A DNA stretch of 64,000 nucleotides from Macrostomum lignano. Taxonomy: Eukaryota. Below the pieces are notes generated by a model. It was not told the origin of the DNA, did not search any database, and saw only the letters and a list, made by a program, of their open reading frames with translations. The position numbers were made by a program, and so were the translations under genes. Shown one piece after another: positions 1 through 61,405 of the stretch. Location: assembly GCA_002269645.1 (NCBI GenBank), contig NIVC01002767.1, forward strand, positions 62,001 to 126,000, written 5' to 3'. Position 1 is the stretch's first letter. Each line of letters begins with the position of its first letter.

Positions 1-50
1 GTCAACAGGGAGTCAACAGGGAGTCAACAGGGAGTTAACAGGGAGTCAAC
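1..50. repeat. 11-bp tandem repeat (GTCAACAGGGA), truncated by window edge
   Basis: About 4 copies read directly. Confidence 0.85.
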
Positions 51-779
51 AAGTATTGAACAAGGGTTGAACAGAAAATACGGTTTTAGAACTATAATCT
101 AAAGTTCACATTGGCGTCTCGATTTTGACATTTCCGTTGTAAATTAGCGAATTTCTGTACAAAACCAATGTGACGGCTGTCTGTGCGGCGTTATTCCTTT
201 TGTTAATATTAAACATTTAAATCTATTTTCTTAGATTTTCTAGAAAGGTTTTCTGCATCTTCTGTGTTCTTCTAACTACTATGCGGTTTTATCCTATAAT
301 TTTATAACATGTATTTCGCACCTATGAGCTGCCTTCAGAGGAAATTGATAGCCTTATGTTTATAAAAAGTGCCACCGACACTTTTCAGCGATGTCTCTAG
401 CGGATTTGGCCTTATTTTTCGATATAATTTCTGCTTTTTATGTCTTTTAGCGTTGTCAAATCTTTCATTCGCATTCCTTAGTAGCCTACTTATTCAGTAG
501 GGTATTGAGAACATTGCAGGAGAAATTGTGCAAAATGCTATTTTTAGCAACAATTAGCCCTTTCGTTAGTAAATATTGTCATCCACAGTTTTGATGCAAA
601 GCCCTCTCTGGCTGATTGACTCCTTAGCATTAGTCTGCTAAACTATTTTCCGCTAATGAAATGATTTATTGCTTCCAGTGTATTATTATTTCAGCTGGGT
701 GGGTTTAGGGCTGTTTGTTCCTGACTACTTCACCTGTTTTTGAAACTAACACTAGTTTCTAGCACTATTTTTTGACACT

Positions 780-1840
780 AAACAGCTCCTGACACCTCAA
801 ACAGTTCCTGACACTTTAAACAGCTCCTGACACTTCAAACAGCTCCTGACACTTTAAACAGTTTCTGACACTTCAAACAGCTGACACTTCAAACAGCTCC
901 TGACACTTCAAACAGCTCCTGACACTTTTAACAGCTTCTGACACTTCAAACAGCTCCTGACACTTCAAACAGCTCCTGGCACTTCAAACAGCTCCTGACA
1001 CTTTAAACAGCTCCTGACACTTTAAACAGCTCCTGACACTTTAAACAGCTCCTGACACTTCAAACAGCTCCTGACACTTTAAACAGCTCCTGACACTTCA
1101 AACAGCTCCTGGCACTTCAAACAGCTCCTGACACTTTAAACAGCTCCTGACACTTCAAACAGCTCTTGACACTTTAAACAGTTTCTGACACTTTAAACAG
1201 TTTCTGACACTTCAAACAGCTTCTGACACTTCAAACAGCTCCTGACACTTCAAACAGTTCCTGACACTTCAAACAGCTCCTGACACTTCAAACAGCTCCT
1301 GACACTTCAAACAGCTCCTGACACTTCAAACAGCTCCTGACACTTTAAACAGTTTCTGACACTTCAAACAGCTCCTGACACTTCAAACAGCTCCTGACAC
1401 TTCAAACAGCTCCTGACACTTCAAACAGCTCCTGACACTTCAAACAGCTCCTGACACTTCAAACAGCTCCTGACACTTCAAACAGCTCCTGACACTTCAA
1501 ACAGCTCCTGACACTTCAAACAGCTCCTGACACTTCAAACAGCTCCTGACACTTCAAACAGCTCCTGACACTTTAAACAGCTCCTGACACTTCAAACAGC
1601 TCCTGACACTTCAAACAGCTCCTGACACTTTAAACAGTTTCTGACACTTCAAACAGCTCCTGACACTTTAAACAGCTCCTGACACTTTAAACAGCTCCTG
1701 ACACTTTAAACAGCTCCTGACACTTCAAACAGCTCCTGACACTTCAAACAGCTCCTGACACTTCAAACAGCTCCTGACACTTCAAACAGCTCCTGACACT
1801 TCAAACAGCTCCTGACACTTTAAACAGTTTCTGAAACTTC
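780..1840. repeat. 19-bp minisatellite (AAACAGCTCCTGACACTTC)
   Basis: Period 19 read directly, about 55 copies with C/T variants. Confidence 0.97.
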
Positions 1841-2066
1841 AACAGGCTCCTTTTAAACCTCTGAACTTGACGCTTCAGCATTCCCTACACTATGCTTCCG
1901 CGATCCGGCTTTGCTTCATGATTTATAAAGACAGAAGACACAAGGCCGAGTTCAAAGTTGAAAGTTCAGAGAGGTCAGGGTGTATTTTGACTCGAACTCA
2001 AAGGCTGTTTTGCATTCCTTTAATCAGTTATCAGTAATAATTAGTAGCGATATTGAGCTCAGCCGG

Positions 2067-2453
2067 TCACTGCAGCAGCTGCATCATCGGACAGGCCCTG
2101 ACCGCCTCCTTCGATGGGGCGCCCGACTTCACCAAGTCGGTGAGGCACCAGCTGTTCGCGCAGTGCAGCAGCTCGGAAGTCTGCAAGAAGGATGGGATGC
2201 AGGTGTTAATGGCCGGTGTTAATCAAACTAACTCTAATAGACTGGCAGAGACCTGTTCAGGTGTCTTGAAGCAGTGGTTACAGAAATACAGGCACCGCTG
2301 CCACGGCTTCATCAGCGGCAGCAAATCGGCGGGCATGAGCTCGTCCTGCTGCTGCTGCTGCTCATCCCGCTGCTGCTGCGCTGCCGGCCCGACGGCAGTT
2401 GCTGCCGCAACGGAGACGGCTAGGAGAATCCAGAGCAGGGAGGAGAAGCTCAT
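2067..2453 (-). CDS. Secreted six-cysteine peptide precursor, eclosion-hormone-like (104 aa, 2 exons)
   Basis: Exon1 2453-2253 (signal peptide MSFSSLLWILLAVSVAAATA, Q-rich linker, ...WQRCLYFCNHCFKTPEQ); phase-0 GT..AG intron 2252-2181; exon2 2180-2067 TSELLHCANSWCLTDLVKSGAPSKEAVRACPMMQLLQ*. Cys spacing C-x3-C-x2-C-x12-C-x4-C-x17-C versus insect EH C-x3-C-x2-C-x12-C-x3-C-x10-C. Gene model is strong; family call is moderate. Confidence 0.7.
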
Positions 2454-2947
2454 GTTTGTTTATCCTGAAACGAGAATTCTTAGAAATTCTTAGAAATTCT
2501 TAGAAATTCGATGTCAGCTGCTGGCAATGCAGGCGGCAGCTGGCGGCTCACCTTAAATACTCCACTCGGCTTGGGCCCCGGGGGCTCAGCGGGGATCTGC
2601 AGGCTCTCCAGAAATCATCGAGAAATCAGGAGCGAGTCCTGCGGTGAAGAATTTTCGATGACAAAATTCTAAATTGAGGACTTCCCGCTCTCTGGCCGGG
2701 AATTCGCCGCGGGGGATGGCAGCTTAAATTCGAATTTCTACGTATTAATGGGGCCGATTGCCGTTGACCTTGCAGCAGTACAGGCTTTGCAGCAATTTTG
2801 AATTTGAATCAAATTTTTGCGACTTAACTGAGGGAGTAATTGTAGCGAGTTAGGCGCTTGGCTCTTTTCACAGGAATTGGCATTCACAGACATTCACAGG
2901 AAGCAAAGATGTGAGCCTCTGAATGACCTTCAGGTGTTAATTAATTG

Positions 2948-3092
2948 TCTATGGCCAGTCACTGTCTATGGCCAGTCACTGTCTATGGCCAGTCACTGTC
3001 TATTGCCACTGTCTATGGCTAATGTCTATGGCTAATGTCTATGGCTAATGTCTATGGCTAATGTCTATGGCTAATGTCTATGGCTAATGTCT
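2948..3092. repeat. Compound 17-bp/13-bp tandem repeat (CTATGGCCAGTCACTGT then CTATGGCTAATGT)
   Basis: Read directly. Confidence 0.85.
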
Positions 3093-3622
3093 AATCAAGT
3101 AGCAGGCTGAGTGAATTGATGGAAAAGCTGTGTAAATTGAGAGGCTGGCTGTGTGAATCGAAGGGCATGCTGATTTAATAAAGAGGGTACTGTGTGGAAT
3201 AGGCAGGCGCTGTGTGAATGGATGGAACTCTGTGTGAGTATTGGGATTTCAGTCCCCAAAGACCCCCTCCCGGATCCGCCCCTGCCCTGTTCCAGCCAAG
3301 CGATTTAGATCACTCTGCATCCGAAAATATAACAGGCGGAACTTAAATCGATGCGGTTGCTACCCTGATAGGGCCCCTGGAACATTTGCCGATCACTTGG
3401 CGGAGCACCAAGTCGGGACTGCAGGATTAATTTTGGCATCCGATCGCAGCGAATGGCAGCCGAATTTAGCCTGCCCCGCTTGCCGAATTTGCAAAACTAC
3501 CACGGGCTTTGGTTGCTGCGAGGAAGCAGGAAGCAGATTAGACTATTTAGCTCGCGCAGTTCTGCACCTCCAGCAAGCAGGAGACCTCAATCTTCCTTGG
3601 AAATATCAACCGCCGCTTGATA

Positions 3623-4396
3623 ATGTCGCCAAGTTGCTTGGCTTCGATTTTGTCGTTTCTGCTGCTACTAGAGGCAGAGCAGCTCAGATCCGAGACTGAG
3701 CACGTTGCCTGCGGCTGGGGCGCCGGGAGCGCGAACCTGAGATTTGACAACTACAAGACTACAACATTAACAATTACATTTTACTGCAACCTTAGCCAAA
3801 GAGTGCGAAATTCTCCGAATCTGGCGGAGAATGCCGATCGGGTCTGCATCGACAAATTCGAGCTCACGACTCAGCTGCCGGCCAACTCGCTGCCAACCCG
3901 GCGCTACAAATCCACCTGCCACTGTCCGACTGCTCTAAGCTGGAGGGGCAGCCGGCCAAGCACCCGCTGCCGCCCCGCCCGCCTGCCCGTGGCGTCTCTG
4001 GAGCCGCTGGATGGCGGCGCGGGCGGTCAGCGCCTCCGTCTGGTGACCCGCCTGCACGGAACCGGCTGCGCCGCGCTGCACCCGCCGCTGAGGCCGCCGC
4101 GGCCGGAGCCGCTGACTGGCGCCGACCTGCGCCGCCTCAACGCCATGCTGGGCCGCCACGGCGCGCTCTACCGGCCCGTCAGCTGCCAGTTGGCCCGAGC
4201 TCAGCCGCAGCCTCAGTTCTTCATCAATGCTGACGCCGCCAGGCTGCCCAGACTGCTGCCGGATGTCCGGTGCCCGTGTCCGGGACAGGCCAGGGTGGAG
4301 CTGCCATTCTTGGAGCTCAGGCGGACGGGCGAAGACGGCCAGCAGCTGCAGCAGAGCCTCGGCAGCATCGGCGTGTCGTGCGCTGTGGCGCCGTGA
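3623..4396 (+). CDS. Secreted protein L1 with two tandem IL-17/cystine-knot-like modules (257 aa, single exon)
   Basis: ATG at 3623, hydrophobic N-terminus (CLASILSFLLLL). Module 1: C..LPTRRYKSTCHC..CRPARLPVASLEP..RLHGTGC. Module 2: RPVSC..FFINADAARLPRLLPDVRCPC..LPFLELRR..SIGVSC, recalling IL-17 N.DP.R.P..L.EA.C..VL.R..V.VGC. Paralogous to 14192-15010. Confidence 0.7.
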   Translation: MSPSCLASILSFLLLLEAEQLRSETEHVACGWGAGSANLRFDNYKTTTLTITFYCNLSQRVRNSPNLAENADRVCIDKFELTTQLPANSLPTRRYKSTCHCPTALSWRGSRPSTRCRPARLPVASLEPLDGGAGGQRLRLVTRLHGTGCAALHPPLRPPRPEPLTGADLRRLNAMLGRHGALYRPVSCQLARAQPQPQFFINADAARLPRLLPDVRCPCPGQARVELPFLELRRTGEDGQQLQQSLGSIGVSCAVAP

Positions 4397-4529
4397 CCGG
4401 CGGCGGGGCTCAGAGGCTCTGCCGACTGTGGGCTGTCCTGTAGACCGCTCAGCAGTCAGCACCCCAGCATCTCCCAACTCTTCATCTATTTATTATTCAC
4501 GGTGCTTTCCTTCATTTCCCACTCTCCCC

Positions 4530-4975
4530 TGCTCTCCCTTCTACTCCCTACTCTCTCCCTACTCTCTCCCTACTCTCTGCCTACTCTCTCCCTACTCTCT
4601 CCCTACTCTCTCCCTACTCTCTCCCTACTCTCTCCCTACTCTCTCCCTACTCTCTCCCTACTCTCTCCCTACTCTCTCCCTACTCTCTCCCTACTCTCTC
4701 CCTACTCTCTGCCTACTCTCTGCCTACTCTCTCCCTACTCTCTCCCTACTCTCTCCCTACTCTCTCCCTACTCTCTCCTACTCTCTCCCTACTCTCTCCC
4801 TACTCTCTCCCTACTCTCTCCCTACTCTCTCCCTACTCTCTCCCTACTCTCTCCCTACTCTCTCCCTACTCTCTCCCTACTCTCACCTCTCCCTACTCTC
4901 TCCCTACTCTCTCCCTACTCTCTCCCTACTCTCACCTCTCCCTACTCTCTCCCTACTCTCTCCCTACTCTCCCCT
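4530..4975. repeat. 11-bp minisatellite (CTACTCTCTCC)
   Basis: Read directly; explains the spurious LSLLSPYSLPT ORFs. Confidence 0.95.
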
Positions 4976-5277
4976 CTCCCTGCCCTCTCGCTCTGTGACC
5001 CCTCCTTTCCATTTTCCGTTGTCCTGACAAACAAACCTGATGCATTGTTTAACAGGGCAGCTGAGACTAAAGCTTGTTGAATGCCGTTTTAATTTGATTT
5101 TTGCTCATAAATAAAGCTGAATAACAAATTTTTCACCTCGATATATTTTTAGAACAAGACTTTTGCTTTTGGAAAACAATATCAATAAAAACACTGGTAG
5201 TGTCCTTAGGTGCGGATATTGAGGGTTCCATGGAATTTCCCATGTAGCCACTTTCATGCTTCTACGAGCGTATGTAC

Positions 5278-11423
<6,146 letters not shown>

Positions 11424-11819
11424 GTCTTTTAGAACTCAGAATCGAAGTGAATTGAATTGAATCCGCGCGAGCAGTTCCCAACAATTTCTGCCATTTATAT
11501 TTGGCTCGGCTGAACAGCCCCAGCTGGCAATGTCAGCCTGTCATTGGCTGCGGGAAATGCAGACAACACATGCCGCCCAGAGCCTGCGATCTCTTGGGCA
11601 GGGAGTTCTAAACGGAGATTCTGGGGGAAACTGACATTCACTGAGCTCTGACACAATATATGGACTCTGGAACTAGCTGGTTGCATCCGTCCTTTCTTCT
11701 CATAGAAAGGGGGTTAATTTTATAGTTCATTCAGATACTTTTTCAATGTGTACCAACCCCCGAGTGCTAATTGGAGTGACATCAGTATCAATAGCCTGCA
11801 GGAGTGCCCACACAGAGCG

Positions 11820-12400
11820 ACAATTAGACAGGGGGTGCGAGTGACAATGCGAGTGACAGCAGGAAAGATACTAGAACAGGAGTGACAACGAGAGTGACAA
11901 CAAAAGTGACAACAGGAGTGACAAGAGTGACAAGAGTGACTACAACAGAAGCGAAAATGAAAATAGTAGTGACAACAGGAGTGATAGCAGGAGTGACAAC
12001 AGGAGTGACAAGAGTGACAACAGGAGTGATAGCAGGAGTGACAAAAGGAGTGACAAGAGTGACAAGAGTGACTACAACAGAAGCGAAAATGAAAATAGTA
12101 GTGACAACAGGAGTGATAGCAGGAGTGACAATAGGAGTGACAACGGGAGTGACAACAAGAGTGACAACAGGAGTGACAAGAGTGACAAGAGTGACTAATA
12201 CAGAAGCGAAAATGAAAATAGTAGTGACAACAGGAGTGATAGCAGGAGTGACAATAGGAGTGACAACGGGAGTGACAACAAGAGTGACGACAGGAGTGAC
12301 AAGAGTGACAAGAGTGACTACAACAGAAGCGAAATGAAAATAGTGGTGACAACAGGAGTGATAGCAGGAGTGACAATAGGAGTGAAAACCAGAGTGATAA
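11820..12400. repeat. Composite GAGTGACAAC/GAGTGACAAG repeat with higher-order period
   Basis: Read directly; a related GGAGTGACAAT composite lies at 38130-38490. Confidence 0.9.
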
Positions 12401-12899
12401 CAAGAATGCTAGCATGAGTTTGTGCTATACAGATAGCTTTAAGATTCGCATCACACTACTATAGTAAGTAGAGATATTGTGCTACTTACAGTAAGCTGTT
12501 GTTATAAGTTTAAGAAGTCGAAGTCTTGAGATGTGCGAGATCGTTGTAGCAACGATAGCGGGGTCTTTGTTGCTCAGGAAACAGTAGCCATGGGCAGTAC
12601 ATAACACCCCAACCAATGCGCAGAAGCACAGAAAGCTCACAAAGTTCGAATGCACCAGGAAACTATACGATCGATCTCTCGGGTGGTTTTCGAATTCTGG
12701 TTTCTGAAGTCTGAACTGAGTTCTGAACTTGGATTGACATCTCGTTTCAGTCGGCTGTACAAATGACTGCATTGAAGACTTTGCATTCAGCCTCAGTAGG
12801 ATTGAGTCGAGATTCTGTCGGTGGGTGAAACTCTGTTACAGAAGAAGAAAGTAGAAAATTTCAGATCGAATATTGGTTCCGCTGTCTGAGACTAAACTT

Positions 12900-13880
12900 C
12901 GGCAAGCCAGCATATTTGAAGGCCTTTCTTCAAGCCTTGAAGACAGAAGATGCGAGCGTGCTGAGAATTTGCACGTCAATCCAGCGAGAAAGACAGATCT
13001 TGGAAAGTACGAGCTAGCACTGTCCGTTGGCTCCGGTACTCAGTCAGAGCCTTTATCCTAGCAGTATCCGGGTACAGTTGACCTTCTTGAAGTATGAATC
13101 CGAGGAACTTGACACTTTCTCTGCACTTTAGCGATCTACGGGTGTTGATTCGGAAGCCGTACTGTGCCAATCTTTCAGATCCTTCGGGCTTCAGCACTGG
13201 CACGATTGGGCATGAAATTATCGGATTTTGTACAGGATAGATGATTCCTGCGCCCGGAAGTCTCTGCAATTCGATCTCGACAATAGTTTTCATAGGACCA
13301 ATCAGATCAACTAATCAGCTCCAGCAGCAGTCACATGCTTATCTCCAAGCGTCTGGCTTCAGAATCAGAGGACAGTCTCGAATCCGGCGTGATAGCTCCT
13401 GACCCGAGTGCCAGCCCTGCTTCCCAAATGGGGTCTTCGTTGGAGTTCAAACTCATAGACATGGCTACTACATATCCGGAGGGGATTCTCCTTCTACCTC
13501 AAAGCTACGGGACACACAGAGGTGAGCAAACAAAGGACGTCTTCCTCACTACCTGCGGATCTGCCGTGCTTACACTAGTTGAGTCTCTGATGAAGCTTAA
13601 TGACATCAGCGCGAACGACTGCACCTACGAAGCAATGAAGGCCAAGATCCTGGAGCAACTCAAGCCAAAAGGCTCCCGTTCAAGAAGCATCAGAATCCGT
13701 GCACGTTACTACCGATCCTCAGAAAACCATCGCCACTATACATCTGCCGCAACAAGTGCGGAAAGCAAGGGCACATTGCATCCGCATGCCCATTATCAGC
13801 GATGCTACAATGCTACAATTCCCTTCAGCGCAAGTTTGCCAATGCTGGCCAGTGAAGAAGCTCGGGGGGGGGGCGTGCAA
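12900..13880. mobile_element. Degenerate, rearranged Ty3/Gypsy-like LTR retrotransposon remnant
   Basis: Minus strand RT-like pieces (GIIYPV..SCPIVPVLKPEGS..; ESVKFLGFIL..LYPDTARIKAL). Plus strand gag-like piece (FLTTCGSAVLTLVESL..TYEAMKAKILEQLKPK) and, in another frame, zinc knuckle CRNKCGKQGHIASAC at 13745-13789. G-run near 13863-13873. Confidence 0.7.
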
Positions 13881-14191
13881 GCAAGCCTCTACGAGCTGCT
13901 ATCAGAAATTCTGTAAACAGAAGCTGCAGATTGAAACAAAAGCCACGAAGGAGCTAAAAATAGCATCAAAATTAACATTATTTAGTAATTCCGGTTCCTT
14001 TTCTGAATACGAATGAATCTGTTGTTGGGCAGCAAAAGCAGAGGCGGCACACTTTTTTGGGCCGGGGGCGGCACAGAGCTTATATTAATAGCGACACCTG
14101 CAGCCGGTCCAATCGCCCAGCTTGGAAGCCAAATAAAAAGTCCAGCAGTTTTGGCAAAGTTGATCATTCAAAGTGCAACAGTCGACCCTCG

Positions 14192-15010
14192 ATGCATCCG
14201 CCGCTGATTCTGTCATTGCTGCTGGCGTTGCTTCTGGCAGCAGAGCTATCCGCCATCGCCGCCGCCTTGTCCAATGCCGCCTGCGGCTGGGGCGCCGGGA
14301 GCTCCGGACTGAGCTATGTGGACTACAGCAGCTCGGAGATGAACGGACCGCCCGGCTGCAGGTTCAGCGTGGAGGATCAGAGCAAATACCAGCTTGCGGA
14401 GAACCTGCGGAGCCTCTGCCCGGAGCAGCTCGCACCGCCGACCTGGGAGAGCCTCGGAGCTTCGGGCAAGTCGCTGCCGGCACTGCGCTACGAGGCGCGT
14501 TGCCAGTGCGCCAGCAGCCTGTCAGGCCCAGTTACAGCAGGCCCAAAACAGGAGCAGCTCAGGCCCGACCTCCGCTGCCGCAACGCCCGCCTGCCCGTGG
14601 CGTCTCTGGAGCCGCTGGATAGCGGCGGCGGCGCCGGCGTCCAGCGCCTCCGTCTGGTGACCCGCCTGCACGGCACCGGCTGCGCCGCGCTGCACCCGCC
14701 GCTGAGGCCGCCGCGGCCGGAGCCGCTGACTGGCGCCGACCTGCGCCGCCTCAACGCCATGCTGGGCCGCCACGGCGCGCTCTACCGGCCCGTCAGCTGC
14801 CAGTTGGCCCGCGCTCAGCCGCAGCCTCAGTTCTTCATCAATGCTGACGCCGCCAGGCTGCCCAGACTGCTGCCGGATGTCCGGTGCCCGTGTCCGGGAC
14901 AGGCCAGGGTGGAGCTGCCATTCTTGGAGCTCAGGCGGACGGGCGAAGACGCCCAGCAGCTGCAGCAGAGCCTCGGCAGCATCGGCGTGTCGTGCGCTGT
15001 GGCGCCGTGA
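14192..15010 (+). CDS. Secreted protein L2 with two tandem IL-17/cystine-knot-like modules (272 aa, single exon)
   Basis: ATG at 14192, clear signal peptide MHPPLILSLLLALLLAAELSAIAAA. Module 1 has RSLCP..LPALRYEARCQC..C..LPVASL..GTGC, matching IL-17 hallmarks RSLCPW and EARC.C. C-terminal half is almost identical to L1. Confidence 0.75.
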   Translation: MHPPLILSLLLALLLAAELSAIAAALSNAACGWGAGSSGLSYVDYSSSEMNGPPGCRFSVEDQSKYQLAENLRSLCPEQLAPPTWESLGASGKSLPALRYEARCQCASSLSGPVTAGPKQEQLRPDLRCRNARLPVASLEPLDSGGGAGVQRLRLVTRLHGTGCAALHPPLRPPRPEPLTGADLRRLNAMLGRHGALYRPVSCQLARAQPQPQFFINADAARLPRLLPDVRCPCPGQARVELPFLELRRTGEDAQQLQQSLGSIGVSCAVAP

Positions 15011-15409
15011 CCGGCGGCGGGGCTCAGAGGCTCTGCCGACTGCGGGCTGTCCTTCATACAGCTGCCTATAAGAGATGAAGACACTGCATGCCAATGAGAC
15101 TGAAAACTTTGCCGATCTTTGCATGGCGCTTCATACTATTCAAAAATAAACTCTGTCAATTTTCAAGATGCATGGAATATCTGTGAGCACTTGGAAAACT
15201 TTGGCTGTGACCTGTACTTCTCTGATTCTTTGAGCGAATGATGAAGAGGGTGCGCTGAGGAAAACTGCTAAGTGGACACATCTGGTAAACCTTTAAGCAG
15301 TTGGCAACAGCATGCATTTATTGTGTTGGAAAATATATTCAATAACATAATATAAACTTATATACAAATTATTTTATATTATAGTAGATTATGACAGATT
15401 GTATATATG

Positions 15410-22337
<6,928 letters not shown>

Positions 22338-24749: not shown

Positions 24750-25133
24750 TCAGATGCGGGACGGGTACAGCATCACGCGGACCCGCTTGCCCATAGCCGC
24801 AGGCGGCAGGTTCGTGGTGAACTTGGCCCTCACGGCGCCCGAATTTCCGTGCGGCCGGGTCACCCGGCCCCAGATGACGCGAACCCGCGACTTCTCCTTG
24901 CCTTTGCCGGGCACGGGGGTCTGCCGCTTGCCTTTGTAAACGTAGGCGCAGCGCTTGCCCAGGTAGAAGTCCACGTCCTGGCGCTTCTCCACGCCTTCGA
25001 TGCGCAGCAGAGCGGTGTTCTCGTGCTGGTTGCGCAGGCCGCGCTTGTAGCCGGTGAACACCGCTTTGACGTACATGCGGCCTGGGGACCGCAGCTTCAG
25101 CGGCTGCTTGGAGGAGGACTGCTCGGATGACAT
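24750..25133 (-). CDS. RPL35A: 60S ribosomal protein L35a (eL33), 127 aa, uninterrupted CDS
   Basis: [83 protein letters not shown]. The N-terminal extension in the ORF track is repeat-derived; ATG at 25133. Confidence 0.97.
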
Positions 25134-25196
25134 GTCTCCGGCTGCTAATGTGAGCTGACTGGCAGCGGGTGGCGGTTGGGGAGTTTGCGGATGCGA

Positions 25197-25570
25197 AATG
25201 ACCTCAGCTGACCCCGACCCCATAGTGACCTCAGCTGAACCCGACCCCATAAGTGACCTCAGCTGAACCCGACCCCTTAGTGACCTCAGCTGAACCCGAC
25301 CCCTTAGTGACCTCAGCTGAACCCGACCTCTTAGTGACCTCAGCTGAACCCGACCCCTTAGTGACCTCAGCTGAACCCGACCCCTTAGCGACCTCAGCTG
25401 AACCCGACCCCATAGTGACCTCAGCTGAACCCGACCCCTTAGCGACCTCAGCTGAACCCGACCCCATAGTGACCTCAGCTGAACCCGACCCCATAAGTGA
25501 CCTCAGCTAAACCCGACCCCTTAGCGACCTCAGCTGAACCCGACCCCATAGTGACCTCAGCTGACCCCAA
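25197..25570. repeat. 27-bp minisatellite (GACCTCAGCTGAACCCGACCCCTTAGT)
   Basis: Read directly. Confidence 0.95.
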
Positions 25571-26546: not shown

Positions 26547-29500
26547 TCAGACGGCGGTGAGCCTAACGATGCGGTCGGGCCGCTGGGCGGAGATCTTCAC
26601 GAAGCCCATGAGCTGCAGCTGAGCGCAGGCCCGCATGAATCGAACTTGCAGCATCTGTGACGGCGACGGCGAATTCTCGGCATTGCCAGCGTCACCATCG
26701 GCGGCGCGGCAGGCGGCAAACGACTGCATGAGCTCCACGGTGCGGACCAGCCTGCGGCACTCCTTCACCAGGCGGAAGGCCACGCGCACGTCCGCCATGC
26801 CGTTTGACTCGCTGACCTCCGCCTCATCGCCGCCCAGCAGCTGCTTCTCAAGCCAGCCGGCCGGATCGGCGGCGAAGGCGGCCGTCAGCGCAGGCCGGCA
26901 GTTGGCGTGGAGGCCGGGCAGCGGCGCTTGCAGGTCGGCGCGTAGGCGCCTATTGAGACAATCGGCCAGGCGGGCGCGCAGATTGGCGCCGATTTTGGTC
27001 TGCTCAGCGCGACGGCTGATCTCAGCCTCCAGCTGCTGGCGCTGCGCCTGCCGGGTCAGCTGATGCGGGCAAATAGGTGCGTTTCCATGGCAATAAGTAG
27101 GTACGTTTCCATGGCAATAAATAGGCACAGTGAGTTGCTGCAAACTAGAAAGACACAGCAACTGAGGATCTGGGAGGCTGGCCCAGCAACTGAGGATCTG
27201 GGAGGCTGGCCCAGCAACTGAGGATCTGGGAGGCTGGCCCAGCAACTGAGGATCTGGGAGGCTGGCCCAGCAACTGAGGATCTGGGAGGCTGGCAAACAG
27301 CAACTGAGGATCTGGGAGGCTGGCAAACAGCAACTGAGGATCTGGGAGGCTGGCAAACAGCAACTGAGGATCTGGGAGGCTGGCCCAGCAACTGAGCATC
27401 TGGGAGGCTGGCAAACAGCAACTGAGGATCTGGGAGGCTGGCAAACAGCAACTGAGGATCTGGGAGGCTGGCAAACAGCAACTGAGGATCTGGGAGGCTG
27501 GCCCAGCAACTGAGGATCTGGGAGGCTGGTCCAGCAACTGAGGATCTGGGAGGCTGGCAAACAGCAACTGAGGATCTGGGAGGCTGGCAAACAGCAACTG
27601 AGGATCTGGGAGGCTGGCCCAGCAACTGAGGATCTGGGAGGCTGGTCCAGCAACTGAGGATCTGGGAGGCTGGCAAACAGCAACTGAGGATCTGGGAGGC
27701 TGGCCCAGCAACTGAGCATCTGGGAGGCTGGCAAACAGCAACTGAGGATCTGGGAGGCTGGCAAACAGCAACTGAGGATCTGGGAGGCTGGCAAACAGCA
27801 ACTGAGGATCTGGGAGGCTGGCAAACAGCAACTGAGGATCTGGGAGGCTGGCCCAGCAACTGAGGATCTGGGAGGCTGGCCCAGCAACTGAGAATCTGGG
27901 AGGGTAGCGGCCAAGCTTGAGAATGGGAGGCCCGAAGAACACAGAGTACCCCAGCCACACACCTTGTGCTCGGAGCCGTGGTCGCCCTGTCCGGGGCTGG
28001 CAACTGCAGGTTCGGTCAAAGCTGCGGTCTCGTCCCGCCGTCTGGTTAGTTCATCGGCTAGTTCGTCAAGATAGGCGGACCAGCCGGCAAGCAGCGACTG
28101 GGTGAGCGAGTCGCAGTCCTCATTGAGCAGGTTGAGCAGCTGCCTGGCGGACTCCACCCTGGCCAGCACAGTCTCGGTGCTCTCAGCCAGCAGGGCGGCC
28201 AGGCGGCTCAGGTATTCCTCGCTGTCGCACAGGTGCTGCCGGTTGCTAAGCAACAGAGAATAGATGTCCCGACGTGAGTCCCAGTTGAGCAGTTTGCCAA
28301 TGAGCTGCATGACCAGCGGCACCGCGCGCAGCTGGCGAAGGTGCGCCGTGCCGGCCGGGTCCTCGGCGCCGATATGGCCGAGCAGCGCGAGCCTCAGCCG
28401 CAGCATGAAGGCCGCTATGGAGAACTCTCTCTCGTCGAAGGCTTCAACTAGACAGTCAAAAGTCGGCCGGCTGAGGCGGAAATGCCACTGCCGGCAGTTG
28501 ATGAGGACGCGGTCCAGCACCCGGTCGAACAGGATGCCGGCCGGGGCGGACCGGAAGCAGCGGACGGACAGGCGGGCCAAGGCGCGGCTGGACAGCAGAG
28601 ACTGCAGGCTGGCCAGAGTCTTGGACAGGCTGCACACACAGGCCACGGGCAGCTGGGCCGCGTAGTGGCTGCTCACCTGGAGGAGATCGATCGGGTGACG
28701 TTGCAAAATTAGCAGCATGCAGTAACCCCCCCCCCCCCTCCGACAAACACGGGGAGGGCGGCTGAGGATCGGACACTGCCATCAGATCCGACACTGCCAT
28801 CCGACACTTTACCAGCATAAAGTACTACTTACTAAGTAGACGAAAACATGTCACTCACAAGAATAAATTTGTTTAGCGCCTTGCCGCTGGTGGTCTCGTC
28901 AAAGTCGCGAATCAGCAGAACGAGCTGCGGCGGCTGTTGCTTTTGCTGCTTCTGCCTTTTGTCCGCGGCAGCCCCGAAGACGCTCTGATAGACTTCAGCA
29001 GCCAGCAGAAACGTGTGCTTTATATTGACAGATACTTTGCCAGCCTGTACCGGGGTGGACCCGATCTCCGGCAGCCACTGGGCCAGCGCTTTGGAGAACA
29101 GCTGAGTAGACGATACCAGGTCGCTGGAGTCAACCTGAGGGAGACAGTTGCAGAGCGTAAGGGTGTTGGTTGGATCTTCGGGTCTCTCGTCAGGGTTAGG
29201 TCTCAATGGGATATTTTTTAAAGATCTTAGAGTAATCTCTAGGCACAGCCAAGTCTGTCCGGAAAGCCCCAGGCATAGTCAAGACTGTCCGGGAAATCCC
29301 AGGCACAGCCAAGTCTGTCCGGAAAGCCCCAGGCATAGTCAAGACTGTCCGGGAAATCCCCAGGCACAGCCAAGTCTGTCCGGAAAGCCCCAGGCATAGT
29401 CAAGACTGTCCGGGAAATCCCCAGGCACAGCCAAGTCTGTCCGGAAAGCCCCAGGTATAGTCAAGACTGTCCGGGAAATCCCCAGGCACAGCCAAGTCTG

Positions 29501-30317
29501 TCCGGAAAGCCCCAGGCATAGTCAAGACTGTCCGGGAAATCTCCAGGCACAGTCAAGTCTGTCCGGAAAGCCCCAGGCATAGTCAAGGCTGTCCGGGAAA
29601 TCCCCAGGCATAGTCAAGACTGTCCGGGAAATCCCCAGGCATAGTCAAGAGTGTCCGGGAAATTCCAAGGTTTCTGAAGTGTCCGGAAAATCTCAGTGTC
29701 TTTTCAAGGTCACTGATGAGTCCCTAGGCCTTACCAAAGTTTGTCAAGGTAACCGAAGAATCCCTGTGACCTACCTGAGCCAGTCGGAAATTCCCACTCG
29801 CCTCAAGGCTGGCGGTCAGGCCGGACAGCATGGCGTCCCTGTCGGGCGTGTTGACCCCGGAGTGCAGCGCGGCGAACGGCAGCCGGCCAGCCAGGCAGTC
29901 GAAGAAGCCGTCGTCATCGGCGGTTGGCGAGTCCGACCGTCGACGCCACCGGAGCAGCCATTCGGCGTGCTGTCCGGCCAGAAAGTCGGCCAAACTGCTG
30001 CAAACGCCGACGTTGGACTCGGCGAGGACGCTGGCCGCCTGCTGTTCGTACCAGGGCCAGACGGCGGCGAATCGAGCGTCGGCCGCCGCCTGCTCAGCGG
30101 CTGCGTCACCACCGCCGGCGACGCCGCTGTCAATCTTCATGGCCAGCGGCTGAGGCGACAGGGCGCGACGGCGGCTTTTGCCGGCCGACTGCGGAGGCGG
30201 CGGCTGCTTGGCTGGCGTCCCCGCTGCGGCGCCCGAAGCCCTGGCAAACTTCGGCAGCCGAGCCAGCAGGGCGGGCGGGCCGTCCAGAATGAGCAGTCGG
30301 CGAGGGGCTGGCTTCAT
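26547..30317 (-). CDS. ORC3: Origin recognition complex subunit 3 (about 681 aa, 4 exons)
   Basis: Exons 30317-29775, 29134-28859, 28676-27963, 27059-26547, all phase 0 GT..AG. Motifs [66 protein letters not shown] match ORC3. Confidence 0.92.
27157..27905. repeat. 28-bp minisatellite, array 2 (ORC3 intron 3)
   Basis: Read directly. Confidence 0.97.
29240..29670. repeat. 30/31-bp minisatellite with alternating A/B subunits (ORC3 intron 1)
   Basis: CCAGGCACAGCCAAGTCTGTCCGGAAAGCC alternating with CCAGGCATAGTCAAGACTGTCCGGGAAATC. Confidence 0.93.
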
Positions 30318-31569: not shown

Positions 31570-34500
31570 TCAGTCCCGCTCAACGATGAGCTCAACAACA
31601 GACTGCTCCATGGAGACGGGATCGATGCAGCGGTGCGCGGCGCTGGCCAGAATCTCCTCGAGCAGAAAGTGCACAACACTGTCGTCGGACACGTAGCGCC
31701 AGAGAAACGCGTGCAGATAGTGGCAGTCCACCTGCACCTGCTGCAGGCCGTAGCGGCCGAAGGTCTTCAACCGGACGCATTCTAGCAGGGTTTTCAAAGC
31801 TAACCGGACAACTCCGGACACAACGGAGGCGCGTCCGAATTCGGCCGGACCGAGAAGGTCGACTTTGTCGCTGAACAGGCGGTGCAGCAGGCTGTTGCCG
31901 AGGGTGGACGGCGTTGCCGACCATTGGCTGCGGCTGGCGGCAGTCAGCGGCCGGCGGGCGAGCCGGCTGGCGCTGCTGTCCGAGGACCGGTCGCCGCCGC
32001 CGCGGCCGCCGCCACCGCTAGGCGCTTCATCGTATAGGCTGGACACCGAAGCGTCGATGCCGGCGAGATCTTCAACGACACGTTTGACAACGGCGCGAAC
32101 TGAACGGGGCTCGATGCCCTGCGGAATTCGACAGTAAATGACAGTATAGAGTACAGTAAATTACAGTATAGAGTACAGTAAATGACAGTATAGAGTACAG
32201 TAAATTACAGTATAGAGTACAGTAAATGACAGTATAGAGTACAGTAAATGACAGTATAGAGTACAGTAAATGACAGTATAGAGTACAGTAAATGACAGTA
32301 TAGAGTACAGTAAATGACAGTATAGAGTACAGTAAATGACAGTATAGAGTACAGTAAATGACAGTATAGAGTACAGTAAATGACAGTATAGAGTACAGTA
32401 AATGACAGTATAGAGTACAGTAAATGACAGTATAGAGTACAGTAAATGACAGTATAGAGTACAGTAAATGACAGTATAGAGTACAGTAAATGACAGTATG
32501 GAGTACAGTAAATGACAGTATAGAGTACAGTAAATGACAGTATAGAGTAAAGTAAATTACAGTAGCTTACAGCATGAGATGTGGTAGCTTTTACAATGAA
32601 TTTAAATATTCTAGATACAGTATGCAAACATTTATGAATCATTAACTACTATGAGTAGATAATCAGCACTCGACGGCAGGCCCCACCGTACCTGCAGCCA
32701 GTCCCTGGCATCCACCGACTTGCGCAGCATGCCGGCCAGGGTGCCGCCGCTAGCGCAGACGTAGGCCTGCAGCAGCTCGGCAGCCGAGTCGCTGTACACC
32801 GCCGACAACTCGCTGACGGGCGTCACCAAAGCCTCCGCCTGGGGAGACTCCGGCACCAGGAATTGCTCGTCTGCCAGGGTGCACAGGTAGTGCAGAGAGG
32901 AGTTGCGAAAGTCCAAACAGTAGCGGGACAGAAGCAGCAGCAGGAGAGGCGGTGGCGTTGGCGACAGCTGGGCGAGGCGGGCGCATTGGGTGGCCTGGTG
33001 GTTCAGGAAGCCGGCCAGGAGCTCCTGGCGGACGGCGCGCACGCAGAACCGTTCGCGGAATGCCGGCTTCAGCGAGAAGCTCACGTCCGTTGCTAGGAAG
33101 GCCTGCGAGTGGTTCGGGACGACATTGGGATGATTATGGATTCTTAAATGAAAGATCTGGGAGGTCGGCGCTGGCCCAGTAACTGAGGATCTGGGAGGCT
33201 GGCCCAGCAACTGAGGATCTGGGAGGCTGGCCCAGCAACTGAGGATCTGGGAGGCTGGCTCAGCAACTGAGGATCTGGGAGGCTGGCTCAGCAACTGAGG
33301 ATCTGGGAGGCTGGCCCAGCAACTGAGTGAAGTGATACATTTTGGCTCTAGAAAGCTCCCATCCAGATTGAATGTATTTTAACCAATGAATGCGCTCCAA
33401 ATAGCAAAAGCTGAGGACACGACCCCAACCTCAACCAATGAAAAGCAGTTATGTACCATCCAATGCGATCAAGACTGAAAAGTACTATAAAAGCTCATGT
33501 TAACCAAGCAAGAAGCTCGCCTTTTTTCTGCTCGCTCCGCCTCTCCACGCCCTTGCCTCTCCTTCGCCATTCTCCTAGCTTACCTCGTTTGACTATTTTG
33601 ATTGACACAGTTAGGGTCTCAACCCAAACACCAAAACTTATAAGTCGACTTACTAAAGCCAAACCAACACCCAATCCACGTTTCACAATAGACTGAACCT
33701 TCGGTTCACCCGAACAACTAGAAACACCTTGTGACTTAAATCGAACGAGCTTCTTATTTGGAATTCCACCTTAGACATTATATTTTGTGAGAAAACATCT
33801 CGAGATTGTGACCATCAAATACAACGGTCTGTAAGTTACCATCAAGTGTTTGCATCATCAGGAAAAGTCAGTTGAATCCGCCGCCTCAGTTATTTGGCTC
33901 TCACATTGATATTTGAAGTAGAACAAGAGCCATAGAAGTGAGAGACCAGAAGAAGAACAAGAACATATATTTTAAAATATTTCATGAGGATCTGGGAGGC
34001 TGGCTCAGCAACTGAGGATCTGGGAGGCTGGCTCAGCAACTGAGGATCTGGGAGGCTGGCCCAGCAACTGAGGATCTGGGAGGCTGGCCCAGCAACTGAG
34101 GATCTGGGAGGCTGGCTCAGCAACTGAGAATCTGGGAGGCTGGCCCAGCAACTGAGCATCTGGGAGGCTGGCCCAGCAACTGAGGATCTGGGAGGCTGGC
34201 CCAGCAACTGAGGATCTGGGAGGCTGGCCCAGCAACTGAGGATCTGGGAGGCTGGCCCAGCAACTGAGGATCTGGGAGGCTGGCCCAGCAACTGAGCATC
34301 TGGGAGGCTGGCCCAGCAACTGAGGATCTGGGAGGCTGGCCCAGCAACTGAGGATCTGGGAGGCTGGCCCAGCAACTGAGGATCTGGGAGGCTGGCCCAG
34401 CAACTGAGGATCTGGGAGGCTGGCCCAGCAACTGAGGAACTGCACACAGGACAAAGCAATAAAACAATAAAACAAGAGGTCCCCCTCACCTGCAGCCCAG

Positions 34501-36492: not shown

Positions 36493-36784
36493 CTGAAACA
36501 GCAGGGGGGTCCATGGACTGCTGGGTCTGTTGGATGTGGCAAGGACTGCTGGCTCTGTTGGATGGGGCAAGGACTGCTAGAGTCCATGGACTGATGACTC
36601 TGTTGTATGGGGCAAGGACTGCTAGAGTCAATGGACTGCTGGCTCTATTGTATGGGGCAAGGACTGCCAAGGTTCCATTGGATTGGCAAACTGAAATCCA
36701 AGGACTGATTAGAAAATTCTAACTGAAATGGTAGGCGGTAGTCAAGGACATATAGTTCAACTTGGACTGGAAAACTGGAAGCTA

Positions 36785-53940: not shown

Positions 53941-53971
<31 letters not shown>

Positions 53972-60582: not shown

Positions 60583-61405
60583 TCACTTCTCCAGCACAAC
60601 AGCGCGCAGAATTTCAACAAGCAGCTGAGGCGGCAGGCGCAGGAGCGTAGCCGACTGCTCACCGTCCACAATGCGCCTAGCATTCTTAGCCACAATTCTT
60701 AGCGCGTGCGATTTAACGCCTTGAGATTTGATAACATCAGCGGCTTCGAGAATAGTGAGCACATTATCGGGCGAAATATTGACCTCGATATTCTGCTTGC
60801 AGTAGGCCTGCAGCCTGTCATTAGCGAAGTTGTAATAGTCGCAGGCGTTGGCAATGTACATGAGGTCGGCCGGCGGCATGCTCATATCGCCGCAGTAGAT
60901 GTAGCGCAGCAGATTGCTGAAGGCCTGCTTGGTTGGCACGAATTTGCCGAAGCTCACCTCAACCACATCGTCCTTGGGTGGAAAGGAGCGAAACAGGGCT
61001 TCGAAGTAGCCACAGCGGGCGGCCAGAACGGCCCGATGGGCGGAGATTCGATGTTCGCCTAGCAACAGAGTCACGTCCGAATAGTCCGGCCCCACCGTGC
61101 TCAGAAAGATGGCCATATCTTTCTTTAAGCTGTTCGTGTGCTCGAGAATGTCGCGCTTGTGCGCGTCGATAATCCGATTAGCAGAGTTGGCCGCCGACAC
61201 AGCGCCACTCGGCGAGGCGGCAAAACGTTCGCGACGCCGGACAACTTCCAGGATTAGCGGCTTGTCCAGCTCTTCGAACTCGCGGCTGTAAGGAGTTTTG
61301 GGGTTTGTTTATGCCAGGGCTGGTGCCTGTCCGCATCTGCTGTCTACGAGCGTAGTCTGTCTGTCTTAGTGTCTGTATGTCTGTCTGTCTGTCTTAGTGT
61401 CTGTA

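What the first reader, a model, noticed from the sequence alone, without database searches (positions are those of the whole stretch)
14192..15010. Single-chain ligand with two tandem IL-17-like modules lacking the second C of the terminal CxC
Seen: module 1 (RSLCP..EARCQC..C..GTGCAA) and module 2 (VSC..PRLLPDVRCPC..GVSCAV) in one exon. Knowledge: IL-17s are normally single-domain proteins that act as homo- or heterodimers and end in GCxC. Inference: a covalently fused heterodimer with a variable module and a constant module, and a rewired disulfide pattern. Module 1 of L1 (LPANSLPTRRYKSTC) also recalls PTTH/Trunk-type knots.
Basis: partly seen in the sequence, partly recalled or inferred. Interest (0 to 1): 0.7.

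Follow-up and report, generated by a model that had tools for sequence, protein, structure and literature searches.

The report
Secreted protein with two IL-17-like modules
Two neighbouring genes in an invertebrate (mollusc-like) genome each encode a secreted protein with two very divergent copies of the interleukin-17 cytokine fold joined in one chain; this arrangement is not described for real IL-17 genes, and here it rests on sequence statistics only.

Summary
The ORF is real: 14192-15010 (+), 272 aa, signal peptide, 11 cysteines. A paralogue lies at 3623-4396.

No relatives turned up in about 1.8 billion representative proteins, and Pfam IL17 is below threshold (12.4 vs 24 bits). A profile built from 55 published IL-17 domains nevertheless matches both halves of the protein over the whole domain:
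- hhalign gives module 2 a probability of 87% (P=4e-6) and module 1 P=1e-3.
- None of 500 shuffles reaches either score.
- HMM scores of 15-17 bits compare with 5 bits for the next best of 500 open frames in the window.

The "missing second C" is not new. C1/C4 plus C2/C5 without C3/C6 is the published T1C type, seen in 8 of the 55 domains, including C. elegans.

The "variable versus constant module" idea is imprecise. A recent conversion or duplication tract, 97% identical, starts inside module 1 and runs past the stop codon.

An independent fold prediction failed (pLDDT 32). The good model (pLDDT 84.5) was guided by IL-17 rows and is circular.

Verdict: a probable divergent tandem IL-17-like ligand and a new variant of a known kind. 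Its action as a single-chain pseudo-dimer is inferred, not shown.

The parts
14192..15010 (+). L2 coding sequence, 272 aa plus the TGA stop: signal peptide, N-terminal extension, IL-17-like module 1, linker, IL-17-like module 2
   Evidence: ORF and translation. GC3 is 0.85. IL-17 HMM gives 15.2 bits in two domains.
14192..14269 (+). Signal peptide, about aa 1-26 (MHPPLILSLLLALLLAAELSAIAAAL); the cleavage site is not predicted with a tool
   Evidence: Read from the translation. The only high-confidence helix in the unguided AF2 model is at aa 5-31.
14279..14302 (+). 24-nt island coding ACGWGAGS, 100% identical to 3707-3730 of L1, inside 5' halves that otherwise cannot be aligned
   Evidence: blastn with word size 7; protein alignment.
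14402..14698 (+). Module 1 (aa 71-169). By homology C76 = C1, C104 = C2, C129 = C4 and C164 = C5 (T1C-type knot); C106 is an extra cysteine.
   Evidence: hhalign aligns aa 71-169 to IL-17 profile positions 27-114, score 23.9, P=1.3e-3, and 0 of 500 shuffles reach it. HMM gives 11.2 bits, 0 of 3000 shuffles. In the MAFFT alignment C76 and C129 fall on the two vertebrate Ser columns. The C4-C5 spacing of 34 aa equals that of C. elegans, Lottia and amphioxus.
14699..14827 (+). Inter-module segment (aa 170-212), Pro/Arg-rich, containing RPPR and C203. It stands where a normal IL-17 chain has its N-terminal extension and has no signal-peptide-like stretch.
   Evidence: Translation. The P0001 match to aa 176-206 was dismissed as a repeat artefact.
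14828..15007 (+). Module 2 (aa 213-272). C232 = C2 and C268 = C5. C234 lies two residues after C2, with the beta2-beta3 loop deleted.
   Evidence: hhalign aligns aa 213-269 to IL-17 profile positions 35-108, probability 86.7%, P=4.3e-6. BLASTP against gibbon IL-17D gives E=2e-5 pairwise. HMM gives 12.3 bits, 0 of 3000 shuffles. An IL-17-guided AF2 model has pLDDT 84.5 and four strands.
14572..15053 (+). Tract 97% identical to L1 3964-4439. It covers the last hairpin of module 1, the linker, module 2 and 45 nt of the 3' flank.
   Evidence: blastn; DNA alignment.
15145..15150 (+). AATAAA polyadenylation-type signal, 135 nt after the stop codon
   Evidence: Pattern search; sequence.
3623..4396 (+). 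L1 paralogue coding sequence, 257 aa plus stop, with the same architecture and all 11 mature Cys conserved. Module 1 is about nt 3830-4084 and module 2 about nt 4214-4393.
   Evidence: ORF list (the tool starts at TTG 3617, and the first ATG is at 3623). BLASTP gives 65% identity to L2. IL-17 HMM gives 17.6 bits in two domains.
15400..16527 (.). Second block duplicated with L1 (5550-6693, 97% identical): a (GTCT)n array plus a 74%-GC island. It belongs to the same duplication or conversion unit; whether it is coding is unresolved.
   Evidence: blastn; composition and frame analysis.

Best explanation
L2 (14192-15010) and its neighbour L1 (3623-4396) are intact genes with no sign of an intron. 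They lie in an invertebrate genome, probably of a spiralian or mollusc-like animal. Each encodes a secreted, disulfide-rich protein made of two very divergent interleukin-17-type cystine-knot modules in one chain.

Module 1 has the known invertebrate 'T1C' cysteine pattern: the C1-C4 and C2-C5 bonds are present and the C3-C6 bond is lost on both sides. Module 2 keeps C2-C5 and has a shortened beta2-beta3 loop. The segment between the modules takes the place of the N-terminal extension of an ordinary IL-17 chain.

Inferred mechanism: the two modules pack against each other as the two protomers of an IL-17 dimer do. This would give a single-chain pseudo-heterodimer with two non-equivalent receptor-binding faces, which would signal through IL-17-receptor-type (FN3-SEFIR) receptors.

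The two genes are old paralogues. Their 3' parts, from the last hairpin of module 1 onward, were recently homogenised by gene conversion or partial duplication. They now differ almost only in the N-terminal extension and the first two strands of module 1.

Shown here: the ORFs, the secretion signal, the conserved cysteines, the statistical similarity of both modules to IL-17, and the conversion tract. Inferred: the fold, the disulfide map, the intramolecular pairing of the modules, and the receptor.
For: Coding status and conservation.

IL-17 similarity:
- Pfam lists IL17 as the only family at E<=10.
- hhalign against six human IL-17s hits module 2 with score 31.1 (0 of 400 shuffles reach it) and module 1 with score 18.
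- An HMM of 55 published IL-17 domains gives L1 17.6 bits, L2 15.2, module 2 12.3, L1 module 1 11.7 and L2 module 1 11.2. None of 3000 shuffles reaches these, with or without the cysteines held fixed.
- Among the window's 500 open segments the next best score is 5.0 bits.
- hhalign against the 55-sequence profile gives module 2 (aa 213-269) 86.7% probability and P=4e-6, and module 1 (aa 71-169) P=1.3e-3. Both span almost the whole domain, and 0 of 500 shuffles reach even the lower score.
- BLASTP of module 2 against IL-17D gives E=2e-5 for that single comparison.

Cysteine pattern:
- The MAFFT alignment places C76 and C129 on the two Ser columns that replace C1 and C4 in vertebrates, C104/C232 on C2, and C164/C268 on C5.
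- The CC.CC. pattern occurs in 8 of 55 known IL-17s. The C4-C5 spacing of 34 and 33 aa lies at the family mode.
- The T1C type is described in PMC11087794.

Context:
- Invertebrate IL-17 genes are often found in tandem and have 0-3 introns (PMC8353272; PMC4517768).
- The host is an animal: its RPL35A is closest to that of the octopus ribosome 9EHO.
- No signal-peptide-like stretch lies between the modules, unlike the fused sea-urchin gene models.
Against: - Pfam IL17 scores 12.4 bits against a gathering threshold of 24, and finds nothing for L1 or for either module alone.
- All 55 bona fide IL-17s score at least 21 bits even with a six-sequence human HMM. The candidates reach only 7.6-11 bits as whole sequences or module 2, and about 0-1 bit for module 1 alone. 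They are therefore more divergent than any accepted member.
- No homologue was found in the 5.8-billion-protein index, in the exhaustive scan of 1.84 billion representatives, among PDB sequences, or in metagenome contigs. The tandem architecture is thus seen only in two recently homogenised paralogues of one genome.
- AF2 with the protein's own two-row alignment gave pLDDT 32. The confident module-2 model and its Foldseek hits to IL-17A and IL-25 were driven by IL-17 rows in the alignment and are not independent.
- The C1-C2 spacing is 21-22 aa in 33 of 33 known IL-17s but 23, 27 and 28 aa here. The W of the CPW/SPW motif is absent.
- The IL-17 hypothesis was suggested by the same motifs that the profiles score, so single-family P-values overstate the evidence. 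Multiplied by 24,736 Pfam families, the HMM E-values become about 0.005-0.03.
Confidence: 0.6

Rival explanations
1. This is a lineage-restricted secreted cysteine-rich protein unrelated to IL-17. The motif matches come from convergence or chance in an Arg/Leu/Pro/Ala-rich, GC-driven sequence.
For: Pfam is below threshold. No homologues exist anywhere. Unguided AF2 failed. The family was picked after seeing the motifs.
Against: No composition-preserving shuffle reaches the scores, even with the cysteines held fixed. Other GC-rich open frames of the same window reach at most 5 bits. Two divergent versions of module 1 and module 2 each hit the same family in register over the whole domain.
Confidence: 0.12
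2. Only the C-terminal module is an IL-17 domain. The N-terminal two-thirds is a cysteine-containing pro-region or an unrelated domain, as in ordinary IL-17 precursors with long N-terminal parts.
For: Module 1 is much weaker: P=0.05 against the human profile, hhalign probability 18%, and 0-1 bit with the human-only HMM. Its C1-C2 spacing is off by 2-6 residues.
Against: With invertebrate sequences in the profile, both L1 and L2 versions of module 1 score 11-12 bits, and 0 of 3000 shuffles reach that. The hhalign score of 23.9 exceeds the best of 500 shuffles. Four cysteines fall on C1, C2, C4 and C5 with the modal C4-C5 spacing.
Confidence: 0.13
3. The protein is a polyprotein precursor. The chain is cut in the Pro/Arg-rich linker (RPPR, aa 172-175), releasing two IL-17-like protomers that then associate as a non-covalent or disulfide-linked heterodimer.
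For: A minimal R-x-x-R motif lies in the linker. From established knowledge, many cystine-knot ligands (NGF, Spätzle, PTTH, Trunk) are matured by furin-type cleavage.
Against: The site is minimal, with Pro at P1' and P2, which furin-type enzymes disfavour (established knowledge). Nothing here tests cleavage.
Confidence: 0.1
4. It is not a functional gene: a chance ORF in GC-rich DNA, or a decaying duplicate.
For: GC-rich DNA here is open in several frames on both strands. L1 has a lower GC3 in its 5' half and no nearby poly(A) signal.
Against: Codon-position GC periodicity is present, both copies have a signal peptide, and the frame and all 11 cysteines are preserved across a region with about 30% identity.
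Confidence: 0.04

Closest known systems
Invertebrate IL-17 of disulfide type T1C (e.g. C. elegans ILC-17.1/F25D1.3, Lottia 169526, amphioxus 117645)
   Same: These are secreted proteins with a C-terminal knot. C1, C2, C4 and C5 are present, while C3 ('GC' after C2) and C6 (the second C of the terminal CxC) are both absent. They share a C2-x-C doublet and a C4-C5 spacing of 34 aa. Their genes have few or no introns and often lie in tandem.
   Different: Those proteins have one domain per chain and all are recognised by a simple IL-17 HMM at 21 bits or more. Here there are two modules per chain, scores of 11-17 bits, a C1-C2 spacing longer by 2-7 residues, no W after C-P, and no Cys in the beta3-beta4 loop to pair with the extra C2+2 cysteine.
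Vertebrate IL-17D (best pairwise match)
   Same: Module 2 is 35% identical to it over the beta1-beta3 core: D-x-A-R-x-P-R-x-L-P-x-x-x-C-x-C-x-G ... P-x-x-x-L-R-R-T. L2 module 1 shares NLRS-x-x-P.
   Different: IL-17D is a T2-type protein (C2-C5 and C3-C6, with Ser at the C1 and C4 positions), has a single domain and forms a homodimer. Module 2 lacks 14 residues of the beta2-beta3 loop and lacks C3 and C6.
IL-17A/F heterodimer
   Same: Two different IL-17 protomers give a ligand with two non-equivalent receptor faces. This is the functional analogy proposed for the fused modules.
   Different: A/F is made of two gene products joined after translation. Here the two modules are one polypeptide. 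Pairing of the modules has not been shown.
Sea-urchin gene models with two or three IL-17 domains (SPU_022838.1, SPU_019350.1; PMC4517768)
   Same: These are the only published mention found of more than one IL-17 domain in one predicted protein.
   Different: They are multi-exon draft predictions. Each unit repeats a whole precursor, including a hydrophobic leader (sequence), so they look like neighbouring genes fused by the annotation. In L1 and L2 one uninterrupted ORF has a single leader and a 40-50 aa spacer.
PTTH / Trunk / Spätzle / noggin cystine-knot ligands
   Same: They are secreted cystine-knot ligands. PMC11087794 places Trunk and PTTH close to the origin of IL-17.
   Different: No Pfam match to any of these families at E<=10.

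Membership tests
Interleukin-17 (Pfam PF06083) | Score at or above Pfam's gathering threshold (24 bits) | tested here: not met
   L2 scores 12.4 bits with E=0.22 and no stretch passing on its own. L1 and the isolated modules give no match.
Interleukin-17 (Pfam PF06083) | Statistically significant similarity of each module to a profile of accepted IL-17 domains, in register over the domain | tested here: met
   HMM of 55 domains gives 11.2-17.6 bits, and 0 of 3000 shuffles reach that. hhalign gives 86.7% probability and P=4e-6 for module 2 and P=1.3e-3 for module 1, with 0 of 500 shuffles reaching either. The next best ORF in the window scores 5 bits. The match is weak by database standards.
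Interleukin-17 (Pfam PF06083) | Cysteines at knot positions in one of the published patterns (T1A/B/C, T2, T3; PMC11087794) | tested here: met
   Met for module 1: C76, C104, C129 and C164 fall on C1, C2, C4 and C5, which is the T1C pattern. Only partly met for module 2: C232 and C268 fall on C2 and C5, there is no Cys at the C1 column, and C234 could stand in for C4 only if the loop is deleted.
Interleukin-17 (Pfam PF06083) | CPW/SPW motif and a fixed C1-C2 spacing (21-22 residues in 33 of 33 references) | tested here: not met
   The motif reads C-P-E in L2, C-I-D in L1 and Q-P-Q in module 2. The spacings are 27, 23 and 28 residues.
Interleukin-17 (Pfam PF06083) | Four-strand cystine-knot fold | tested here: inconclusive
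   Unguided AF2 gave pLDDT 32. AF2 of module 2 with IL-17 rows gave pLDDT 84.5 and four strands, and Foldseek then found IL-17A and IL-25 at TM 0.6-0.68. That result is circular. Module 1 was not modelled.
Interleukin-17 (Pfam PF06083) | Secreted, with the knot at the C-terminal end of the chain | tested here: met
   There is an N-terminal hydrophobic leader. Module 2 ends 4 residues before the stop, and module 1 ends 5 residues before the Pro-rich spacer.
Interleukin-17 (Pfam PF06083) | Dimeric ligand that binds FN3-SEFIR receptors (IL-17R) | not testable with these tools
   No receptor gene lies in the window (Pfam scans). Binding and oligomeric state need experiments.
PTTH/Trunk, noggin, Spätzle/NGF knots | Profile match to the family | tested here: not met
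   No such family is listed by hmmscan at E<=10 for L1, L2 or the modules.

The most novel reading that the evidence does not exclude
This is a natural single-chain IL-17: two IL-17 protomers fused into one polypeptide that folds as an intramolecular pseudo-heterodimer with two fixed, non-equivalent receptor faces. The gene family would diversify by keeping one face constant through gene conversion while the other face (the N-terminal extension and beta1-beta2 of module 1) diverges freely, giving a modular way to generate cytokine specificities in a spiralian.
Probability: 0.3. Interest if true: 0.72.

Novelty: new variant of a known kind. Interest (0 to 1): 0.55.

Why it matters
IL-17 cytokines are known as dimers of separate chains, and how asymmetric dimers recruit two different receptor chains is an active question. 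A natural fused version would fix the stoichiometry and orientation of the two faces. It would be a ready-made model for asymmetric receptor assembly. It would also show that invertebrate IL-17 repertoires diversify by changing domain architecture as well as by gene duplication.

The case also shows that IL-17 relatives can sit well below Pfam thresholds and be absent from protein databases. Surveys that count IL-17 genes by domain hits would therefore miss them.

Tried and rejected
Searches and predictions that led nowhere:
- The homologue search with L2 in the 5.8-billion-protein index found nothing.
- The exhaustive HMMER scan of 1.84 billion representatives with the L1+L2 profile gave one hit, P0001 (E=3.5e-4). 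It is a 1934-aa repeat protein matching only aa 176-206. I rejected it as a repeat-summed artefact, because the same protein collects nine unrelated Pfam families with no passing stretch.
- PDB sequence search found nothing.
- Exact-product look-ups for L2 and a neighbouring ORF found nothing.
- The metagenome contig scan found nothing.
- Rfam over the whole window found nothing.
- AF2 on the two-row alignment gave pLDDT 32, so no Foldseek search was run on it.

Tests of internal repeat and similarity:
- Direct similarity between module 1 and module 2 is not significant by BLASTP (E=0.18), and Smith-Waterman gives z=2.4. The internal duplication is supported only through the common match to IL-17.

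Literature:
- Searches for two or tandem IL-17 domains found no paper.
- The supplements of PMC11087794 are not held.

Side questions left unresolved or dropped:
- For the downstream GC-rich island I tested frames, codon-phase of substitutions and Pfam. All were inconclusive.
- I considered and dropped the PTTH/Trunk/noggin reading (no profile match) and the idea that the variable/constant switch marks a module or exon boundary (it lies inside module 1, and the identical tract extends into non-coding DNA).
Full report
**What is there.** Window 14192-15010 (+) is an uninterrupted ORF from an ATG to a TGA, encoding 272 aa.
- The protein begins with a hydrophobic leader (MHPPLILSLLLALLLAAELSAIAAAL) and has 11 cysteines after it, at positions 31, 56, 76, 104, 106, 129, 164, 203, 232, 234 and 268.
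- A paralogue, L1, lies 10.5 kb upstream. Its first ATG is at 3623 and its stop at 4394-4396 (257 aa); the ORF tool starts it at TTG 3617.
- No third copy is in the window by tblastn or by the IL-17 HMM over all six frames.

**Is it a gene?**
- GC by codon position is 0.71/0.56/0.85 for L2, and the flanks are about 45% GC.
- L1 and L2 keep the reading frame and every one of the 11 mature cysteines across 5' halves that share only about 30% of residues and cannot be aligned as DNA.
- A TATA-like motif lies about 110 nt upstream of the L2 ATG, and an AATAAA lies 135 nt after the stop.
- The antisense ORFs over the same DNA are what 70-75% GC produces. Their codon-position GC is the mirror image of the + frame.
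- I conclude that both are real coding genes for secreted, disulfide-rich proteins. Whether the mRNA is unspliced cannot be shown without transcripts.

**The host.** The window carries RPL35A, ORC3, VPS51, a mitochondrial carrier, an MFS transporter and a BTB protein.
- The VPS51 exon is at best 50% identical to anything in the protein index, with the limpet Patella as top hit.
- RPL35A scores highest against the octopus ribosome 9EHO (180 bits). Zebrafish follows at 164, human/rabbit at 158, Drosophila at 154, C. elegans at 145, plants at 128 and yeast at 102.
- The source is therefore an animal, most likely a spiralian with no close annotated relative in the databases.

**Relatives.** None were found.
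- The indexed search with L2, the PDB sequence search, two exact-product look-ups and the metagenome scan all returned nothing.
- The exhaustive HMMER scan of 1.84 billion representatives gave one hit, P0001. It is a repeat protein whose score is summed over repeats, and it collects nine unrelated Pfam families in the same way. I dismiss it.

**Is it IL-17-like?** Standard annotation says no.
- Pfam IL17 (PF06083) is the only family listed at E<=10, but it scores 12.4 bits (E=0.22) against a threshold of 24.
- It covers only aa 93-111, and it finds nothing for L1 or for either module alone.

I therefore tested the hypothesis directly with profiles.

Their profile retrieves the IL-17A, IL-17F and IL-25 PDB chains at up to 175 bits, and my IL-17D is identical to the published NP_612141.1. 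With this profile, hhalign gives:
  - Module 2 (aa 216-236, INADAARLPRLLPDVRCPCPG) matches the core motif D..RyP..l.eA.C.C.G with score 31.1.
  - Module 1 (aa 71-112) matches the same region with score 18.
  - Of 400 column shuffles, 0 reach 31.1 and 18 reach 18.
- *HMM of 55 published domains.* I took the 55 IL-17 sequences from the S1 dataset of PMC4517768, covering nematodes, annelid, molluscs, Daphnia, sea urchin, Ciona, amphioxus and vertebrates.
  - The HMM gives L1 17.6 bits and L2 15.2 bits, each as two domains. Module 2 alone scores 12.3, L1 module 1 scores 11.7 and L2 module 1 scores 11.2.
  - None of 3000 shuffles of each query reaches its score, whether or not the cysteine positions are held fixed.
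- *Local null.* I scored all 500 stop-to-stop segments of at least 50 aa in the six frames of this window with the same HMM. L1 and L2 score 17.0 and 14.6 bits, and the next best scores 5.0.
- *Profile-profile comparison with the 55-sequence alignment.*
  - Module 2 (aa 213-269) aligns to profile positions 35-108 of 118 with probability 86.7% and P=4.3e-6.
  - Module 1 (aa 71-169) aligns to positions 27-114 with P=1.3e-3.
  - The best of 500 shuffles scores 23.5, below both observed scores of 37.1 and 23.9.
- *Pairwise BLASTP.* Module 2 against gibbon IL-17D gives 35% identity over 51 columns, E=2e-5 for that single comparison. One 14-residue gap lies at the beta2-beta3 loop.

These are single-family tests of a hypothesis that the same motifs suggested. 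Multiplied by the 24,736 Pfam families, the HMM E-values become roughly 0.005-0.03. That is still suggestive, and it is reinforced because three sequences hit the same family in register: two divergent versions of module 1, and module 2.

As a yardstick, all 55 accepted IL-17s score at least 21 bits even with the six-sequence human HMM. With that HMM the candidates reach 7.6-11 bits as whole sequences or module 2, and about 0-1 bit for module 1 alone. They are more divergent than any accepted member.

**Cysteine pattern.** A MAFFT alignment of the three modules with 27 vertebrate IL-17s is colinear from end to end.
- C76 and C129 fall on the two serine columns (S-P-W and the Ser before beta3) that replace C1 and C4 in chordates.
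- C104 and C232 fall on C2. C164 and C268 fall on the first C of the terminal GCxC (C5).
- Neither module has the 'GC' cysteine (C3) or the last cysteine (C6), so both partners of one knot disulfide are missing together.

PMC11087794 classifies exactly this as type T1C, in which the 3/6 bond is lost and the 1/4 and 2/5 bonds are kept, and describes the T1A/B/C supertype as present across non-olfactorian animals. In the 55 references the pattern CC.CC. occurs 8 times, including C. elegans F25D1.3 (…VGCHSV) and Lottia 169526 (…IGCVAL).

The C4-C5 spacing is 34 aa in module 1, the same as in C. elegans, Lottia and amphioxus. It is 33 aa in module 2 if C234 is counted as C4. So the feature in the finding's title is real but is a known IL-17 variant.

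Three things depart from the family:
- The C1-C2 spacing is 23, 27 and 28 residues, against 21-22 in 33 of 33 references.
- The W of the CPW/SPW motif is absent.
- Module 2 has no Cys at the C1 column, and its C2 and next Cys are separated by a single residue.

After the homology-based pairs (76-129, 104-164, 232-268), five cysteines remain: 31, 56, 106, 203 and 234. One must therefore be free or intermolecular. This disulfide map is inference.

**Fold.**
- AF2 of module 2 with IL-17 rows in the alignment gave pLDDT 84.5 and four strands, at module residues 17-22, 30-35, 41-54 and 60-74.
- Foldseek then returned IL-17A, IL-25 and IL-17F at TM 0.6-0.68.
- This shows only that the sequence is accepted on an IL-17 scaffold. 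It is circular as evidence.

**Two modules in one chain.**
- The spacer between C164 and the start of module 2's first strand is about 49 residues. It is Pro/Arg-rich and has no hydrophobic leader, so it stands where an ordinary IL-17 chain has its N-terminal extension.
- Modules 1 and 2 are not significantly similar to each other directly. Any internal duplication is therefore old.
- Full-text searches found no paper describing tandem IL-17 domains.
- PMC4517768 notes two sea-urchin models with two and three IL-17 domains. In their sequences each unit is a whole precursor with its own leader, so they look like annotation fusions of neighbouring genes.

**Variable and constant parts.** DNA identity between L1 and L2 jumps from unalignable to 97% at 14572/3964. 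That is codon 127 of L2, two residues before C129, inside module 1.
- The identical tract runs to 15053/4439, 45 nt past the stop.
- A second colinear block, 15400-16527 = 5550-6693, is also 97% identical.
- Within the coding part of the tract, synonymous and non-synonymous differences are about equal.
- This is a recent gene-conversion or partial-duplication tract laid over old paralogues. It is not a conserved 'constant module'.
- Its consequence is still that the two proteins differ almost only in the N-terminal extension and strands 1-2 of module 1.

**Mechanism proposed.** The protein is a secreted tandem IL-17-like ligand whose two modules pair intramolecularly as IL-17 protomers pair. 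This would give a pseudo-heterodimer with two different receptor faces that acts on IL-17R-type receptors.
- Shown: the secretion signal, the conserved cysteines, and the statistical IL-17 similarity of both modules.
- Inferred: the fold, the pairing, the receptor, and any immune role.
- Rivals: chance resemblance (0.12); only module 2 is IL-17-like (0.13); a precursor cut at RPPR into two protomers (0.10); not a functional gene (0.04).

**Verdict.** This is a probable new architectural variant of a known cytokine family. It is highly divergent, it is seen so far in one genome only, and it lacks independent structural or expression evidence.

Noticed in passing
window 3707-3730 and 14279-14302: These 24 nt are perfectly identical and code ACGWGAGS just after the signal peptide. 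They sit inside 5' halves of the two paralogues that otherwise cannot be aligned as DNA. There is no synonymous change in 8 codons. This could be a micro-conversion tract or a nucleotide-level constraint.
   Followed up: partly
window 5950-6700 and 15850-16600: A 74%-GC island lies downstream of each paralogue, after a (GTCT)n array. The two copies are 97% identical and include a CAG/CTG run. The island is open in several frames on both strands, and its GC3 pattern fits the minus strand best. There is no Pfam hit, and substitutions show no codon-phase bias. Whether it is coding is unresolved.
   Followed up: partly
window 27056-28003, 32632-33294, 33890-34852 (minus strand): The same minisatellite, translating as ...[28 protein letters not shown]..., recurs inside long open frames of the ORC3 locus and two neighbouring loci. 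It is probably an intronic dispersed tandem repeat.
   Followed up: no
window 1-20000: Tandem repeats are extremely dense: 16 TRF rows with score >=200 in 20 kb (some overlapping rows describe the same array). They include (GTCT)188, (AGT)152, (AACT)136 and 11-34-nt minisatellites with 40-60 copies.
   Followed up: no
window 24750-25250 (-), 26547-30317 (-), 35899-36570 (-), 44363-44872 (-), 53608-55541 (-), 60583-61200 (-): The neighbouring genes are housekeeping ones: RPL35A, ORC3, VPS51, a mitochondrial carrier, an MFS transporter and a BTB protein. RPL35A is closest to the octopus ribosome protein (PDB 9EHO), which places the source among spiralian-type animals.
   Followed up: partly
window 3623-3963 and 4396-5200: The 5' half of L1 has a lower GC3 (0.655) than that of L2 (0.794). 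L1 has a CT-rich minisatellite in place of the L2 3' flank, and its first AATAAA is 714 nt after the stop. L1 may be the less used or decaying copy.
   Followed up: no
published dataset, not the window (S1 dataset of PMC4517768): Sea-urchin models SPU_019350.1 and SPU_022838.1, reported as having three and two IL-17 domains, repeat whole precursors including hydrophobic leaders. They look like neighbouring genes fused by annotation.
   Followed up: partly
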